DNA from: Oculina patagonica
Taxonomy: Eukaryota
Direction: 5' to 3'
DNA length: 64,000 nt
NCBI RefSeq assembly: GCF_052425735.1
Contig: NC_135760.1
Location: 29,512,001 to 29,576,000 of the forward strand
The position numbers were made by a program, and so were the translations under genes. Below, piece by piece: positions 41,601 through 48,675 of the stretch. Each line of letters opens with the position of its first letter. Position 1 is the stretch's first letter. The notes under the pieces were generated by a model, which saw nothing but the letters and a program-made list of their open reading frames with translations, was not told the origin of the DNA and made no database searches.

Positions 41601-44255
41601 TTTATCTTTGCAATTTCGCCCTGGGCTGCCAAGAAATGAAGAGAGGGATCTGAAAACATCAAACATAATCCAGTTTACTATCAGAGCTTTATAATTTGTC
41701 CTTGAAAATATGACTTAAATTTTTAAGGATATTCCCCTTTGATATTCCCCAGTGTTGCATTGCGCATCTCTACTGCGTATAATTTTATGCAGTGAGATTA
41801 TGTGTTATAATTACCTTATTCTTGCTAAATTTTGTGAGTATTAAATTTTGCGAAATATTAAGAGCCACATTTCACGAGGAAGGTAGAATTGGAGTGTATT
41901 AAATTTGGGATTTTTTTCTATTCTTAAATATGAAGCTTTGACCTCAGAACTGTAACATGATTAATATTTGATTGTCATCGTAGAAAACAGCAAACAAAAT
42001 AAGCTAAACATAACAAAGCAAAAGGTATTCTACAGTCTAAACACCCAATAGGTACAACTGCAACTGCACAAGCAAGATTATGAAGAACTACTTAGCGGCA
42101 GAGGACAGTTCAGACAGTGAGATTCATGGAGTGAAAGGATAAATGATATACAAAATCAAACAAAAAACTCCCAAACATGAAGCTGAGAGAAGTTGGAATA
42201 ACTGTAATAAAGCAACAGCTTGAATTTCATTATTTTATTGATATTATACATACTAGTGGTAACCACAGGTTAGAAATTGCGGGCCCTCATTATTCCAACA
42301 GGTTGCGAAAATTTCTCTGACAGTGTCGATAAATCACTGGACAATTACTGGATTATTCCGAGTAACGCGTCACGCAAGGATGCATGTAATCGAACACGCG
42401 GTGTAATTGGGATGTGATTTTCCTCGGTCGGTGAACTAGCCTGGTGAACTTGCTATGTTGTCAGTGTTGTAACGAATTTTTCGAGATCAACCATTGTTGG
42501 AATCATTTGTTTGGCAGTGGTTTATCTGTGATACAATAACAGTAAATCTTCTCAATACCAACGCCGAAACAACGTCTGCAAAACGTAATGTTTCCAATCT
42601 TGCGTGTGACAGAAGCCCCGATCTTATGGGATAAACTGTTGAAATTGACGCATATTTTGCATTCTAATCATTCTTGACGAACAGATTTTCAACTTTCACA
42701 ATTAAATTTTGCAATTTTAATCTTTCCGTGATCCATATTTTGCGAGTATTAAATTTTGCGATTTAAGTGCATGCAAAATTAAGTAAGAATAAGGTATTTT
42801 CTAGCTTACACTGTGCTGCACTATCACCATTGCTGAGATTCTCCTTTACTTCTTGTTCCAACTACACAAGCAAAGACATATACCGGTACACGTCAGATGG
42901 AACGAGAAAAAAACAAATACATATTAAAACTTTGAATTCTATTCAAACAAACTTTATTACATTTATTCTATAAATCTAAAAAATGCAGATGCATGAGTAC
43001 TCAGTTGATTTTACTCCAGATAATAATTTTCTGGAGTAAAATTAAAGTTTAATTAATTATTTTTATCCCATTTGAAACCACGAAATGGTGTAAATTACCT
43101 TTTTTTGAGTGGAACAACTACCAGTAATAAAAAAATATCAGAATATCATTCAAGCATCCAGAAATTGAACTTCTTTTGTTATGCACCTATCAATGTTAAG
43201 CCTGAGGGGGGAGGGGGGTCGGGCAAGGGGGGGGGGATTTTGACATTTTCTATAAAAAAAAGTCAAATTCCCCACCCCTGGGACAAAATAATTGGCCAAA
43301 ATCCCCACCCGGGAGCAATGAAAGGTGGTCAGATGTCCTTCAAACCTTGTTGCAGGGGATCATATATGACCAAAATCCCTACCCTGGGGCAATCACGTAC
43401 GATCAAAATCCCTACCCTGGGGACCGACCTCAGGATCAAATTCCCGTGGTTAGCCCAACCCCCCCCCCCCACCCCTCGGGCTTAACATTGATAGGTGCAT
43501 TACTGGATCGAAAAGTGCTGTAGGTGATTTGCATACCCTCCACCAAACCATACTCCCCCTACCTAAGAGATGCACAGACCATAACATGCGGGACCTCACA
43601 AATTTTTATACTAATGCTGTACTCCATGTGCATGGGTACGTGACTACCCAGGGGATGATAAGCCTGTGTTTAATAATATACAGTAGCTCGCACCTTAATG
43701 CCGCTAGTCAATTCTTTTGTAGATGAAGGCCTAGAGCCTCTCTTGACTGAAGCAGGAGTACCAGACTGGGAAAAATTAGGCTCTGAGAAAGAATGTTGCC
43801 ATTTTTAGTAAACAAACAATTAAAATGGACAAAAGGAAATTAAAGAGATTGTTTAAAAACAGTTACGGCTTGTCCCAGAAAATACAGCAAAAAATAAAAA
43901 ATAAAAATATGATTTGCAAGAAATTTGAAAGCAACAAGTTATGACAAGTTATTGGAACTTCTTAGTTTTTCAACTATTTCCACATGTGTTTTCCATGGCG
44001 ATTTTAGTTTTTCGCAGGCGATGAGTACATTTTCGATAGTTAACAGTAAGCTTTATACATTCATTCTGTGTCAAGGTATATAACTTAACTATCAAAGCAG
44101 ACTGCAGATTATAAAGTATCCAGTAGTATCGAACTGCACGTGGTTTATATTTCGCTCTCACCTGTTGCCAGTACCGCGGCCACCTCTTGATCAGGTTCCA
44201 GGTGATTAGCCAGCTTATCTTGCGGCTCTCCCTGTGACTCTTGGTTCCCTAACAT
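24366..44255 (-). CDS. RFXANK: RFXANK/ANKRA2-family ankyrin-repeat protein; exons 44255-44162, 43782-43694, 42861-42810, 41649-41584, 29785-29718, 28959-28804, 26045-25979, 25224-25144, 24448-24366
   Basis: Phase-consistent GT-AG exons give ...SLHFLAAQGE...DKTGLTPLAWAAAHRQ...GETALSFAACQG...GGTPLMYAAYNGY...GADLTATNNEGHTALSLAVGVGNKNVQRVMEDYL, matching the RFXANK/ANKRA2 ankyrin series. Confidence 0.85.
26230..26652 (+). mobile_element. 5'-truncated LINE (CR1/L2-like) 3' end
   Basis: ...GRTFAVTAAKEWNKLPTNIRSSQNVKLFK C-terminus, AATAAA and (TTA)n tail. Confidence 0.75.
26810..28449. mobile_element. Non-autonomous Mutator-like element with 9-bp TSD
   Basis: TIR AGCAGGAGGGCATTTTGCGTGCGCATGCGT, perfect TSD TAACTGAGG at 26801-26809 and 28450-28458. 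Confidence 0.85.
29443..29511. repeat. Perfect 69-nt AT-rich palindrome
   Basis: 34-nt arms ggcttctaaagtttttaagacaatattattcttt with a 1-nt centre. Confidence 0.9.
30542..31606 (+). pseudogene. Ngaro gag-like ORF1 with an in-frame TGA at 30956
   Basis: ORFs 30542-30958 and 31004-31606 are in the same frame; WLAAWFQF and YSYDVRFR motifs, CCHC knuckle CARCKGYDHLAREC and C-terminal Cys/His finger. Confidence 0.85.
34227..38480 (+). pseudogene. Transposon-borne multi-exon BEN-domain gene; degraded first exon ~34227-34396, then 34755-34844, 35455-35592, 35749-35820, 36280-36330, 36544-36609, (unclear), 37602-37824, 38374-38480
   Basis: Clean phase-0 exons; C-terminal RLLRTLMDMFFTPEVMAGSTAKG...LDALDPQTMEALYRFV...NDKCYSYRRK fits the BEN pattern; the putative exon 1 has stops and a frameshift. 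Confidence 0.75.
37860..38111. mobile_element. MITE in the last intron of the BEN gene
   Basis: Ends atacctgccaact / agttggcatgcaggtat; internal ctcacgcc and cttcgga repeats. Confidence 0.7.
39654..40646 (+). CDS. Ngaro tyrosine recombinase (intact ORF)
   Basis: FLLRCGEF, KTSKTDQ, GHSFRVGGAT, GRWSSDCYRRY (R-K-H-R-W-Y catalytic set); ATGA overlap with the pol stop. Confidence 0.95.
   Translation: MKVNYYFQHGLAPSTQRTYSAPQRQFIAFCTQHQLQALPASQYTLQLFAAHLAQRLKPQSIPVYLAAVRALHIAHGFDNPLKDTLQLKQTLRGISRVHGEPPTQKLPITFDILNSMRPLINISLHDDLVCWAAMVIAHFFLLRCGEFTVSQPNAFSPAYHLTVADLQLKTSSEGHQYVALRLKTSKTDQFRRGHVLYAGHSSHHICPVCIASQLLALYNGSNTPADSTPLFALDDRSALSRPVLLKFVSQQLRLLGFDPLAYGGHSFRVGGATSAASAGLNDYAIKTLGRWSSDCYRRYIRTPISSILQLSSKIAKSGHSQYCYANPYDI
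41813..42796. mobile_element. Non-autonomous TIR element with a nested repeat (~42253-42680)
   Basis: taccttattctt...aagaataaggta ends and repeated attaaattttgcg motifs. Confidence 0.55.
43182..43499. mobile_element. PIF/Harbinger (Tourist-like) MITE
   Basis: TTA|TGCACCTATCAATGTTAAGCC...GGCTTAACATTGATAGGTGCA|TTA. Confidence 0.8.
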
Positions 44256-45199
44256 TCTACTGTGATCATTAGTGTTAAAAAACTTTCACTCCATTCAACA
44301 AAACACAAAATCGCAAAATCTATTCATCAAGTCATTCATCAAAACAAATGATTTCATGGTTCTCGTTCCAGTCCTAAGCTCGGTTTTGCCTGCCACAACC
44401 TGAAAGGGATTGTGGGAGATCAACCTGAGACTTTTTCAAATACGAAACAATTCAAAATGCAAGGCAACTCCACATAGAAATAAAATAGAACATATTTACT
44501 GAAAAATAGTTTGGCATTTGATCTGCCCTTCATCTCAGATTGTTTTGATTCCCAGTTCGAGTGAAGCTTAACCCGAGACGGTTTTACCGGGGGGGTCCGC
44601 ATGGCGTACTGATTGGCTCTCCTGTGTGTCTCGATATTAGATTATGAAATAAAGAAGATACTACGCGCGCTGTGGTTGGGGAATGGTTGATAACCAACAA
44701 ACCTTAACTGTAAGACGGAGATAGGAAACTATTTAATATAGATTATAGAACACTTTCTTTCCATCAGTTCCAGCCAAACACTGGTTATTGAAACACTCGT
44801 GCAAAGTTTGGGCGAACTAGAAATGTCTATGAAAACGTTTACACCGCATTTCTTGTGCTACTATGACGCTTTGGAAACACAGAAGATTTTTCGTACTTTT
44901 TAAAAAGACAAAGACTTCAAATCAGTGGAACGGCCTGATAAACTACAATAATTCGTATCAAGTCTAAATGATTCATGTAGTTGAAGAGTGGGAAATGTAA
45001 GATCTATTTCCACCGGCGAACCCAAAGGAAGACTGAAGGGCGCAGTTACAAATGTATTGAGATGATTTTTCCCAAATAAAAAATAACATCAGAGACTAGA
45101 CTGGCTTGGGGCGTCTTTTTCAAGCTTATTTATTATTTCTATCGGCACATGCTGACAGTTTTCTACCTGTTTCATAGCAAGCACGTTATGTTTGTGTGT

Positions 45200-46093
45200 T
45201 TAGTCCCAGTCTGTTTTGATATCATGGAGCTTAGTAACAACTGATTTTCTCAAACCAAAGTTTGGCAAACTGCTTTCCAATTCAGTAGCAATGTGAACAG
45301 TCTTGTCAGCGGACTCCTCTTTGAACAGTTGAGGCTGTTGAGCGTCTAATTTTCGTTGGTCTGAGGAAGTTGAAGATGACGATGGATGTTTATTAAGGGA
45401 AATATCAACTCCTCCTGATTCACTGCTTAGCGTAGTTTCGTCTTTTGTAACGTGCATTTTTAGTTTTCCTGCATCACCACTTACGTGAAATCCTCCATAT
45501 TTAACATCTGATTTTTTACTACCCGAAACGTTCTGTTTATCAAAGGCAGACTGCTTTGTAAAATATTTTCTTTGCTTTTCTGGTGAAATTGAAGAACCTT
45601 TCCTTAACAAAACCCTTCTTAGTTTTTGTCCCGACTTTAACTTTTCTGAACTCTTTGAATAAACTCTTTTTTCCAGTGCGAGTGACTTCATTGATTTGTT
45701 TCTTCCTGATTTCTTGGCTTGCCGTCCTAAAGGTATCATTCTCTTGAAAATCGCAGATTTACGAAAGCTGATGGAACTCCATCCTGGCTGAGTAACATGT
45801 ACTATAGGTTTGTCCGACTTTAGGACGGGATATTCCGCTGTTCCAGGCTTAACTACTACTTGAACAGAATCTGCTTGGGCTGTTACCTTCGCTTGGTCTT
45901 TAGTTGCTGTAATTTTCAAATCCCCTGATTTGTCCTCAACTTGAAAGTGCGCCTTTTGTCCCGCGCTTTCAGCGGCTAGAGCAATAGGCATCAAAAGCGA
46001 CTGGAAGACAATACACGCAGCGAGCAAGCCATAAAATAACTGCATTATTTTGCTAGTGTAGACGGCAGAATACTTCCTGGAGAAAATTGCCAT
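45200..46093 (-). CDS. Uncharacterised secreted protein, 297 aa, with two copies of a ~40-aa beta-rich domain
   Basis: Hydrophobic signal ending IALA-AE; repeats HFQVEDKSGDLKITATKD... and GFHVSGDAGKLKMHVTKD...; basic linker with RKS/KKS sites. Confidence 0.8.
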   Translation of the reverse strand: MAIFSRKYSAVYTSKIMQLFYGLLAACIVFQSLLMPIALAAESAGQKAHFQVEDKSGDLKITATKDQAKVTAQADSVQVVVKPGTAEYPVLKSDKPIVHVTQPGWSSISFRKSAIFKRMIPLGRQAKKSGRNKSMKSLALEKRVYSKSSEKLKSGQKLRRVLLRKGSSISPEKQRKYFTKQSAFDKQNVSGSKKSDVKYGGFHVSGDAGKLKMHVTKDETTLSSESGGVDISLNKHPSSSSTSSDQRKLDAQQPQLFKEESADKTVHIATELESSLPNFGLRKSVVTKLHDIKTDWD

Positions 46094-46922
46094 CTTGCCA
46101 AGCGAAATGGAATTGCTAAACGTCTTTCAGTCAACTGCTATTGTTTTCTTTAACTCGTGGTAAGAGCTGTTAAATAATTTATTAGAACATTCTATGTTCA
46201 TTTGGACGAGAAAAACTTCATCCTGCCGGAAGGACTTCATGATCATGAGTTTTTAAAGTTCGAACTCATCACCGAGACAGCTTATTACTGGCACTCCTTC
46301 GACAACACTTAAATAATAGAGAAAAATTTCAATCTCTAAATAGAGAGACAAATTATTTGAGACACGTTCCACCAGTTATTTTTTGTCGGGTGGTTTTCTG
46401 TGTGCCTGTTAGTTAAAGACGCGTAGATCGTGTCAACTGGAACATTTCTTCAAAAACCGACTTCATTTTAGTATCGCGTTTGACTACCGGCGGAAACGTT
46501 GTTTATATTTCTAATTAAATTCAGTGATGTTTTTTTTGTTTAACGATGGCGCTAATTAAAGTTTAGAAAACTTGATGCTAAATATTTGTCTTCTTCAATT
46601 TATCGAGGTATACAACAATAAACCGGAATGGATCACGAAATTTCTTTCTTTCATTTTTATTTCATTTTTTGCAGTATATGACAGTGATAACGGCGGTTAA
46701 GTAAATCACACAGAATTCTTATTTGAGATTTTAGAGCTTTAGGCGCAGAAAACCAATGAAAAAGGACAATCGCGACCAAACTGAGATAGCTTGTTAATTG
46801 TCTTTTTCAATATTTATTTAATGAGCAGGTTCTTTACCGATCCCATTATCCCTTTAACGCCCCTCTATTGTTTCCAGAACCTGCTAAAGTTAAACCGATG
46901 CTTTGTCACTTAAGTGCCCATC

Positions 46923-47824
46923 ATGGAAGTGTTACGACTTGTGCGTTCCTCGAGAATTTCGTTCCTGACTATTTACTGTTTTGTCATTGTCGTCGCAATG
47001 TTCATATCATCGATTAAATCTTCTCCCATTCCGCAAGACGCTGGAGGTTTTCAGAAACCACATTTCCAGGTAACGCCGAAGAACTTCTGACGCGAAAATT
47101 GGACCTCCGAATGGAGCACGAGATATCGTTCGTGATTGATTTTAGATTATTAGTCGTGCAATTTTGAGAGATTATAATTCAACTTTTATGCCAGAAAATA
47201 ATTTGCTTAACTTGGAAATATCGCATACTTGTTTTGATTTTTTTTTTGCCAGTTTAAGTTAAATCAACCGTACGTAGTCTAGACTGAGTTTTTGAATTGT
47301 AACTTTTTCATCTTTTCACGGTTAGGACGGTTAGCTTGCGTCTTCTTAGAGTTTTGACATTTAATATTTTTTGTGCTGAAATTCCAAGTTAAAAAGCGAA
47401 GAAATGCAAAATTTACCTCTCCAGCGATGCCTCGATCGTTTTGTTACACGTTAAAAATGTTTAACAGTTCGCTGTTCTCACTAATGTTTTCATTAGTATA
47501 TGTATCGAGCGATCGAGCGATGCGATCTCTGTATGAAAATCAGATTAACGACGAAAAAAAGAAAAGGAAGGAATAAGCCTGGACAATAAGAAGAGAACCT
47601 ATCTGGCTTACAATTATTTTCTTGTCTTACGTTTTTATCAGGTGGAACACAAGGCTGGTGTTTTGTCGATCATGGCTACAAAGGATAAAGCTGATGTTGA
47701 TGTGAAGTCCGACACGATTCGTTTGCTGGTAAAGCCAGGAGATAGACAAGTTCCCGCTGCTAAAGAACCCGAGGTCAAGACAGTTCACGTGGAAGCAAAT
47801 TTACCGCAGATTTCCGCCCTCTGA
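46923..47824 (+). CDS. Uncharacterised secreted protein, 109 aa, paralogue of 45200-46093 (exons 46923-47069, 47642-47824)
   Basis: MEVLRLVRSSRISFLTIYCFVIVVAMFISSIKSSPIPQDAGGFQKPHFQ|VEHKAGVLSIMATKDKADVDVKSDTIRLLVKPG...; phase-0 GT-AG intron. Confidence 0.8.
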
Positions 47825-48675
47825 CACTAAACAAAACCCTTGATATAGCTTAAGAGTCAACGTGAGTTCAACAGCTTTTATACTGCATCAACGTTTTGAG
47901 CAAACGCTCGAAGAGGCCATGCCACGAATGCGTCTATGTTTTTCTTAATTTAAGACTACTTTCGTAAGATATTCTTCTGAAATACCAATTACTTGCATTG
48001 ACAATTTCACTTCTGCACAGCGAAATGAAGAAAGCCAGTAGTACTATGTAATTTCCTCTCGAAGAACGAAGTTGTCGCACGACAACTGGTAGCCAAAGGA
48101 GCAGCCAAACAAGAATTCGGCCATGTCGATTTTGTATTGTTACAGGAGATAATGCCCTGTAGCTAAGAACAGGCTGTCTGCATGCACGCAGTGAGGGTGG
48201 GGTGGCCGGGGCAAGAACTGGGCGAAAGAAAACGCACGCCACGCGCGCCCTTTTCAGAGAGACTCGTTGCTCGTGGTGGTTCAATGAAAAAATAACCAAA
48301 AAATTGATAGCCGATAAAGGAAGACTATGTAAAGCTCAGGTTTTGTTCGAATCTCTAGATGTATTTTCAACTGTGGTGAAATCGTAGAAAACCATTTCAT
48401 TCAGGAGCCAGTGGTTTCTCTAGACCAGATTTAAAGCAATTTTTTAAGAAACGCCTGTTAGCACTCAGAATCTAAGTTACTGGACTGGGCCACCGTTTGG
48501 TCTGGCTGGGTCATCTGGGTTCTACGGGGCATCTCTTACGCTGAATCATGTGGAACACAAGCTTCAAAAGAATACAAAGTAGACTAAAAACGAAGCTTTT
48601 ATTGGAACATTTTCAATATAGACTAACACCGCTTCCTTTTAAAGATAAATTGCAGCTATTCACAGTTAAAACGCT

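What the first reader, a model, noticed from the sequence alone, without database searches (positions are those of the whole stretch)
45200..47824. Head-to-head paralogous secreted proteins defining an unrecognised ~40-aa domain family
Seen: the ATGs are 830 bp apart and divergent, and both proteins have signal peptides. The domain occurs three times: QKAHFQVEDKSGDLKITATKDQAKVTAQADSVQVVVKPG, GGFHVSGDAGKLKMHVTKDETTLSSESGGVDISLNKH and QKPHFQVEHKAGVLSIMATKDKADVDVKSDTIRLLVKPG. Each is followed by a K(T/PI)VH(V/I) strand. The mature regions lack cysteine and alternate hydrophobic and polar residues (beta-meander). The long protein has a very basic linker with RKS/KKS/KR sites. Inference: co-regulated, proteolytically processed subunits that may co-assemble as matrix, mucus, cnidocyte or defence proteins. 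The second gene appears in the ORF track only as its 3' exon, without the signal peptide.
Basis: partly seen in the sequence, partly recalled or inferred. Interest (0 to 1): 0.75.

Follow-up and report, generated by a model that had tools for sequence, protein, structure and literature searches.

The report
Cnidarian-only secreted beta-domain gene pair
Two back-to-back coral genes encode small secreted proteins built from a roughly 40-residue beta-sheet domain that matches no known family. The pair has stayed side by side since corals and sea anemones diverged, but what it does is still unknown.

Summary

- **Gene A** (minus strand, 45200-46093, intronless, 297 aa) and **gene B** (plus strand, exons 46923-47069 and 47642-47824, 109 aa) are real and transcribed. 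Their ATGs are 830 bp apart.
- **The B splice** (GT..AG, phase 0) appears in assembled contigs of four runs from four studies.
- **Both proteins** have one N-terminal hydrophobic segment and no cysteine in the mature part.
- **The domain** occurs twice in A and once in B. The statistical support is B vs A-N E 1.4e-11, and A-N vs A-C hhalign 85%, E 6e-6.
- **No known relatives.** The domain has no significant Pfam, PDB-sequence or fold match. AlphaFold2 predicts a four-strand antiparallel meander.
- **Rarity.** A profile search of 1.84 billion proteins found 67 representatives. Every one that carries an organism name is cnidarian (Anthozoa, Scyphozoa).
- **Two further paralogues** lie on another contig of this genome, one a 6188-aa His/Pro-rich repeat protein.
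- **The head-to-head arrangement** recurs in all five other genomic loci I could read, including Nematostella (LOC116612445/6).

Function is inferred only. I read the domain as an N-terminal assembly module of secreted, mostly low-complexity proteins, with A and B as a co-regulated pair. Processing, co-assembly and cell type remain untested, and I found no literature. The scan's other notes do not cover this family.

The parts
45200..46093 (-). Gene A coding sequence: intronless, 297 aa plus stop. It encodes a secreted two-domain protein.
   Evidence: ORF. 48 homologues from E 3e-160 to 2e-35 across Hexacorallia. An RNA contig covers 45122-46112.
45122..46112 (-). Gene A transcript as assembled (991 nt). 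An AATAAA signal sits on the minus strand at about 45129-45134.
   Evidence: X1 record 1; sequence.
45971..46093 (-). Signal peptide of A (about aa 1-41, probable cleavage after A-L-A).
   Evidence: Hydrophobicity. Aligned orthologues have short signal peptides ending just before S-x-G-Q-K-A-H-F-Q.
45842..45958 (-). Domain copy 1 (aa 46-84, QKAHFQ...VKPG). It is nearly invariant from coral to sea anemone.
   Evidence: Alignment A1. AF2 predicts four strands with pLDDT 82-90.
45794..45811 (-). K-P-I-V-H-V strand following copy 1.
   Evidence: K79, P80 and H83 (281-aa numbering) are invariant in 31 sequences.
45755..45763 (-). First conserved R-K-S site (F-R-K-S-x-I).
   Evidence: K96 invariant.
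45527..45745 (-). Basic linker, variable in sequence and length (pI 11.4).
   Evidence: AF2 pLDDT is below 50.
45386..45496 (-). Domain copy 2 (aa 200-236, GGFHVSG...LNKH), preceded by a conserved S-K-K-S.
   Evidence: hhalign against copy 1. AF2 predicts four strands with pLDDT about 71.
45242..45304 (-). K-T-V-H-I strand and the third site, G-L-R-K-S-V-V.
   Evidence: H251 is nearly invariant; G264, K267 and S268 are invariant.
46113..46917 (.). Intergenic region between the two transcripts, a presumed bidirectional promoter.
   Evidence: No RNA depth here in X1; X3 reaches only to 46213. No motif is conserved across species.
46923..47069 (+). Gene B exon 1: signal peptide plus the first six domain residues (QKPHFQ).
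   Evidence: The same exon lies upstream of A in Nematostella and three other loci.
47070..47641 (+). Gene B intron: GT..AG, phase 0, 572 nt.
   Evidence: Joint seen in contigs of four runs. The intron sits at the same position in L013 and L012 and is absent in L011.
47642..47824 (+). Gene B exon 2: the rest of the domain (to 47740), the K-T-V-H-V strand (47777-47791) and the stop codon.

Best explanation
Genes A and B are a deeply conserved, divergently transcribed pair of paralogous genes in a scleractinian coral. They encode cysteine-free secreted proteins built from a cnidarian-restricted domain of about 40 residues. I call it the HFQ domain, with consensus H-F-Q-V-x-D-K ... K-P-G.

Shown:
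- Both genes are transcribed.
- The domain is duplicated inside A.
- The family has no known sequence or fold relatives.
- The pairing predates the coral/sea-anemone split.

Predicted: each domain is a flat four-strand antiparallel meander. Hydrophobic and polar residues alternate along its strands, so one face is greasy.

Inferred: the domain is an assembly or docking module that pairs sheet against sheet, with itself or with other family members. In most family members it sits directly behind the signal peptide, at the head of long low-complexity bodies (His/Pro-rich, Gly/Met-rich, Asp-rich). A (two domains joined by a basic linker) and B (one domain) would then be the minimal, co-regulated core subunits of such an extracellular or secretory-organelle material. 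The conserved [RK]-K-S sites would be processing or cross-linking points.
For: - Transcription and splice.
- Orthologues from Acropora, Stylophora, Pocillopora, Exaiptasia, Actinia and Nematostella.
- Conservation: the N-domain is 77% identical between this coral and Nematostella over 73 aa, while the linker is not conserved in sequence or length.
- Paralogy statistics.
- Head-to-head adjacency in Nematostella (L007), L011, L012, L013 and L014, plus adjacent gene numbers in three Acropora species.
- Four-strand model of copy 1, with pLDDT 82-90 over residues 11-40. The same strand pattern in copy 2.
- Other members carry the domain on low-complexity bodies: a 363-aa protein and a 6188-aa protein in this genome and members elsewhere.
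- Only 67 representative hits among 1.84 billion proteins. The named ones are Anthozoa and Scyphozoa.
Against: - No experiment and no expression atlas was available, so cell type and localisation are unknown.
- The full-length AF2 model is poor (mean pLDDT 52) and does not pack the two domains together.
- The A-N + B complex prediction gave no verdict, so it counts neither way.
- Conservation of the domain is unusually high for a structural matrix protein and would also fit a ligand.
- I found no shared promoter motif.
- Seeing both transcripts in the same runs is biased by how the runs were chosen.
Confidence: 0.45

Rival explanations
1. A is a precursor of the prohormone type. Convertases cut at the three conserved [RK]-K-S sites and in the basic linker, releasing the highly conserved N-domain (and B) as secreted signalling ligands for a conserved receptor.
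For: - The N-domain is extremely conserved: 32 of 74 columns are invariant in alignment A4 (18 orthologues) and another 14 are at least 90% conserved.
- The di-basic-plus-Ser sites flanking each module are invariant.
- The linker is basic and variable.
- Larger family members carry many K-R-Q sites typical of convertase cleavage: 16 in the giant protein.
Against: - R-K and K-K are weaker convertase sites than K-R or R-R.
- No amidation or other peptide-hormone signature is present.
- The same domain heads 6000-aa repeat proteins, which are unlikely to be ligands.
- There are no cysteines to stabilise a small ligand.
Confidence: 0.2
2. The pair are defence or membrane-active proteins. The amphipathic beta-hairpins insert into or coat target membranes, and the cationic linker acts like an antimicrobial peptide.
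For: - The alternating hydrophobic/polar strands and the very basic linker.
- The weak shape matches are to long beta-hairpins of pore formers (NetF, CDTb, lysenin), but all are non-significant.
Against: - All fold matches fall below any meaningful threshold (best Z 2.4, E 0.6).
- Immune effectors usually evolve fast, whereas this domain is almost frozen.
- The linker sequence is not conserved.
Confidence: 0.08
3. The C-terminal domain copy is a diverged Toastrack (Pfam DUF4097) beta-helix repeat, so the family is an offshoot of a known superfamily.
For: One orthologue (P0029) scores 23.9 bits against a cut-off of 22.9, E 3.2e-5. Nine of 31 orthologues reach E <= 0.1.
Against: - The window protein has no DUF4097 hit even at E 10.
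- The hit covers only about 60 of the 247 profile positions.
- AF2 predicts antiparallel hairpins, not a beta-helix.
- No fold match to any such structure.
Confidence: 0.1

Closest known systems
Pfam PF13349 (DUF4097, Toastrack domain)
   Same: Both are beta-rich with short strands carrying S-G-x-[VIL]-x-[VIL] patterns. Some orthologues of A give marginal hits on the second domain copy.
   Different: The window protein has no hit. Only a quarter of the Pfam profile is covered. The predicted topology is an antiparallel meander. The family is confined to cnidarian secreted proteins.
Terminal assembly domains of low-complexity structural proteins (spidroin N-terminal domain; minicollagen/cnidoin cysteine-rich domains, PMC4321713)
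   Same: A small conserved domain at the end of long repetitive, compositionally biased secreted proteins. Some family members have Gly/Met-rich stretches reminiscent of cnidoin's composition.
   Different: There is no sequence or fold similarity. The HFQ domain has no cysteines, whereas minicollagen and cnidoin domains work through disulfides. The resemblance is by architecture only and is my inference.
Prohormone or polyprotein precursors cut at basic sites
   Same: A signal peptide, conserved basic sites flanking conserved modules, and a variable spacer.
   Different: The sites are R-K-S and K-K-S rather than K-R or R-x-x-R. The released units would be 70-100 aa beta domains, not short peptides. 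Processing was not tested.

Membership tests
Pfam DUF4097 (Toastrack) | Score at or above the Pfam gathering threshold (22.9 bits) | tested here: not met
   The window's A and B have no DUF4097 hit at E <= 10. One of 31 orthologues scores 23.9 bits, and eight more are weaker, down to E 0.1.
Pfam DUF4097 (Toastrack) | Single-stranded beta-helix-like 'toast-rack' fold | tested here: not met
   AF2 gives four antiparallel strands per copy. No structural match above Z 2.4. The models are of moderate confidence only.
Any Pfam-A family | Significant hmmscan hit | tested here: not met
   A, both exons of B, ten diverse family members and both large paralogues have no family above its cut-off.
Any solved structure | Sequence-profile or fold similarity to a PDB chain | tested here: not met
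   hmmsearch with profiles A1 and A8 found 0 hits at E <= 10. Best Foldseek E is 0.6. Best VIA-align Z is 2.4.
Minicollagen/cnidoin-type cnidocyst wall proteins | Cysteine-rich domains (CRDs) at the termini | tested here: not met
   Mature A and B contain no cysteine. The giant paralogue is 0.1% Cys.
Minicollagen/cnidoin-type cnidocyst wall proteins | Localisation in the cnidocyst wall or expression in cnidocytes | not testable with these tools
   No expression atlas or proteome could be queried by these gene identifiers.
Neuropeptide/prohormone precursors | Cleavage at basic sites releasing bioactive products | not testable with these tools
   Only conserved [RK]-K-S motifs are seen. No peptidomics data were available.

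The most novel reading that the evidence does not exclude
The HFQ domain is a cnidarian invention that works as a polymerisation or docking module, pairing beta-sheet face to face. It nucleates assembly of a whole set of low-complexity secreted proteins (His/Pro-rich giants, Gly/Met-rich and Asp/His-rich proteins) into a cnidarian-specific material such as part of the stinging capsule or another secreted structure. The A/B pair, kept under one bidirectional promoter for more than half a billion years, is its obligate heteromeric core.
Probability: 0.25. Interest if true: 0.75.

Novelty: categorically new. Interest (0 to 1): 0.55.

Why it matters
Cnidarian-specific gene families are the main candidates for explaining cnidarian-specific structures such as stinging capsules, mesoglea, mucus and skeleton-forming tissue. 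This family has four features that make it worth following:

- a domain with no known relatives;
- near-frozen sequence across Anthozoa;
- members ranging from 100 aa to more than 6000 aa;
- a gene pair whose head-to-head arrangement has survived since before corals and sea anemones diverged.

Such conserved divergent pairs are rare outside histones and usually mark subunits needed in fixed proportion. The pair exists in Nematostella (LOC116612445/LOC116612446), where knock-outs and reporter lines are routine. The question is therefore directly testable.

Tried and rejected
- **Complex prediction.** A N-domain plus B, using the Nematostella sequences, scored 0.02. The tool gave no verdict, so this is not evidence either way.
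- **Full-length AF2 model of A.** Mean pLDDT was 52, too poor for a fold search.
- **Fold searches with the domain model.** Searches against PDB, AFDB clusters, the wide PDB set and the ESM Atlas gave only generic beta-hairpin matches: HU/IHF arms, pore-toxin hairpins and OMP barrels. None is significant.
- **ESM Atlas feature search.** No usable hit.
- **PDB sequence-profile searches.** Nothing.
- **Pfam.** Only sub-threshold beta-repeat families (DUF4097, DUF6470) appeared. I reject these as memberships.
- **Literature.** I searched for gene and protein accessions from Nematostella, Stylophora, two Acropora species (A. millepora, A. digitifera) and Exaiptasia. I also searched peptide strings and the supplements of the Nematostella matrisome paper. 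No paper mentions these genes.
- **Shared promoter motifs.** Six intergenic regions share no more exact k-mers than shuffled sequence.
- **Contig look-ups.** Those for the Stylophora, Acropora and Exaiptasia orthologues failed: no exact record. One locus came without DNA.
- **Asp/His-rich family members.** A homologue search for organism names returned none.
- **Earlier notes of this scan.** A words search found no note on this family.

Full report
**What is there.** The window is from a scleractinian coral. The best named relatives of the long protein come from Stylophora, Pocillopora and Acropora (56-64% identity), then Nematostella, Actinia and Exaiptasia (43-45%).

Gene A is an intronless minus-strand ORF at 45200-46093, encoding 297 aa. 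A 991-nt RNA-like contig covers 45122-46112. It therefore includes the first ATG and ends just past an AATAAA signal.

Gene B starts at 46923 on the plus strand. Exon 1 ends at 47069 and exon 2 runs 47642-47824. The GT..AG intron is 572 nt and phase 0, and it falls between H-F-Q and V of the domain.

The splice is present in contigs of four runs from four studies, one of them a recorded polyA RNA-seq library. Two of the runs have no depth over the intergenic region or the intron, so they behave as RNA.

**Protein features.** Each protein has one N-terminal hydrophobic stretch and nothing hydrophobic afterwards. The orthologues show short, typical signal peptides ending a few residues before the domain.

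The mature proteins have no cysteine.

A consists of a conserved module, then a basic linker, then a second module.
- The linker has pI 11.4 and 23 K/R in 73 residues, and it varies in sequence and length between species.
- Each module is a roughly 40-aa domain, a spacer, a K-x-V-H-[VI] strand, about nine residues, and an [FL]-[RK]-K-S-x-[VIL] site.
- A third site, S-K-K-S, precedes the second module. These residues are invariant or nearly so in 31 orthologues.

**Is the repeat real?** Yes, on four counts.
- B's domain matches the N-domain of Nematostella A at 50% identity over 56 aa, E 1.4e-11.
- In the coral's own genome, B's exon 2 alone scores E 1.9e-4 against A.
- A profile of A's N-domain aligns to a profile of A's C-domain with hhalign probability 85%, E 6.2e-6.
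- B also hits another species' C-domain at E 5e-4. The family profile matches A-type proteins in two stretches.

**Is the domain known?** No.
- Pfam gives nothing above threshold for A, for B's exons, for ten diverse family members, or for the two large paralogues.
- The only recurring weak hit is DUF4097 (Toastrack), on the second copy. One orthologue is 1 bit over the cut-off, eight more reach E <= 0.1, and the window protein has no hit.
- Profiles find no PDB sequence at E <= 10.

AlphaFold2 with a 61-sequence family alignment predicts four antiparallel strands: HFQVEDK, DLKITA, AKVTAQ and SVQVVVK. pLDDT is 82-90 over residues 11-40. The full-length model shows the same four-strand pattern in the second copy, at pLDDT about 71. 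Everything else in that model is low.

Fold searches return only generic long hairpins. The best Foldseek E is 0.6 and the best Z is 2.4.

Hydrophobic and polar residues alternate along all four strands. A flat sheet of this kind would have one greasy face. That is my inference from the sequence.

**The family.** A profile search of 1.84 billion representative proteins found 67 hits at E <= 0.001. Every hit that carries an organism name is cnidarian. The named species are Nematostella, Exaiptasia, Actinia, Stylophora, Pocillopora, several Acropora, and the scyphozoans Sanderia and Aurelia. Many other hits are unnamed, so a wider range is not excluded.

The hits fall into several architectures:
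- A-type (two domains);
- B-type (one domain, 95-125 aa, one with a long repeat tail);
- proteins of 150-700 aa with His/Pro/Gly/Tyr-rich bodies;
- proteins with poly-His and poly-Asp tails;
- giants of more than 5000 aa.

In most of them the domain sits directly after the signal peptide.

This coral genome has two further members on another contig, 35 kb apart.
- One is a 363-aa protein.
- The other is a single-ORF protein of 6188 aa, with the domain at residues 401-440.
- It also has 17 R-P-P-x-I-Y-H-P-P repeat units and 22 matches to [GAS]-[KR]-S-x-[VI] motifs.
- Its C-terminal series has 15 units that start at K-R-Q and carry P-[RH]-V-S-[VI]-N-V-[EQ] strands.

These motifs echo A's R-K-S and K-x-V-H-V motifs.

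**Conserved arrangement.** The head-to-head pairing appears in every other genomic locus I could read.
- **Nematostella (L007).** The A orthologue (LOC116612445) lies 398 bp from the first exon of the B orthologue (LOC116612446) on the opposite strand. An ankyrin-repeat gene lies downstream of A.
- **L011, L012, L013, L014.** Four loci from other cnidarians show the same arrangement, with ATG-to-ATG distances of 206-668 bp. The B intron is at the same position in two of them and absent in one.
- **Acropora.** Three species have adjacent gene numbers for the pair.
- **Downstream gene in the window.** Weak similarity (E 0.002) to the Nematostella ankyrin gene's first coding exon lies at 44157-44234 (-), just downstream of A. 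It has the expected place and orientation.

**How it probably works.** What is shown: there are two transcribed, secreted, paralogous proteins carrying a new domain, and their pairing is ancient. What is inferred follows.
- An amphipathic four-strand sheet needs a partner surface.
- Almost every residue of the domain is conserved across half a billion years. That suggests both faces and both edges are constrained, as in a homo- or heterotypic assembly interface.
- The domain heads otherwise fast-evolving, low-complexity secreted proteins.

I therefore favour an assembly or docking module for a secreted or organelle-bound cnidarian material (confidence about 0.45). In this reading A (bivalent) and B (monovalent) are made together from a shared promoter. 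The [RK]-K-S sites could be convertase or cross-linking sites, but nothing here tests that.

The rivals are:
- a processed signalling precursor (0.2);
- a diverged Toastrack relative (0.1);
- a membrane-active defence protein (0.08).

The complex prediction returned no verdict and is not used.

**Novelty.** RefSeq annotates the genes as 'uncharacterized'. No paper in the searchable library mentions them by accession or sequence. I rate the domain family as new at the level of family and fold assignment. Its biological interest is moderate to high, because the function is unknown but testable in Nematostella.

Noticed in passing
G000:C2:27907222-27925785 (-), read as L010 and L008; N-terminal part in L004: A single uninterrupted ORF of 6188 aa with a signal peptide. 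The HFQ domain is at aa 401-440. It has 17 His/Pro-rich R-P-P-x-I-Y-H-P-P repeat units, most ending F-G-K-S-x-V. It also has a Gly/Met/Asn-rich stretch and 15 C-terminal units that begin at K-R-Q and carry a P-[RH]-V-S-[VI]-N-V-[EQ] motif. No Pfam family matches. Orthologues of more than 5000 aa exist in other assemblies (P0071, P0075, P0082).
   Followed up: partly
L002:694-1785 (-) = G000:C2 about 27888811-27889902: A 363-aa secreted paralogue with the HFQ domain right after the signal peptide. It continues with a His/Pro stretch, an R-K-R-Q site and a Gly/Tyr/Ala/Leu/Gln-rich body. It lies 35 kb from the giant gene on the same strand.
   Followed up: partly
window 44157-44234 (-): Weak similarity (tblastx E 0.002, 61% over 26 aa) to the start of the ankyrin-repeat gene that lies downstream of the A orthologue in Nematostella. 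The three-gene order B / A / ankyrin (RFXANK-like) therefore looks conserved between sea anemone and coral.
   Followed up: partly
L011:214-1501 (Logan contig of SRR30948330): In a divergent cnidarian of unknown identity the pair is compressed to 206 bp between ATGs and B has no intron. There B ends with L-G-K-R-S-R-V-P, the same kind of basic-Ser site that A carries.
   Followed up: no
window 47825-48400 and beyond: The gene B transcript contig continues unbroken for more than 1 kb past the stop codon (X1 record 4, 1250 nt). B therefore has a long 3' UTR, or the contig merges with a downstream transcript.
   Followed up: no
window 44600-47066 in run X2: One contig of run X2 runs continuously across gene A, the intergenic region and exon 1 of B, yet skips the B intron. 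This suggests read-through or mixed DNA/RNA assembly in that run. I did not use it as evidence for a single transcript.
   Followed up: no
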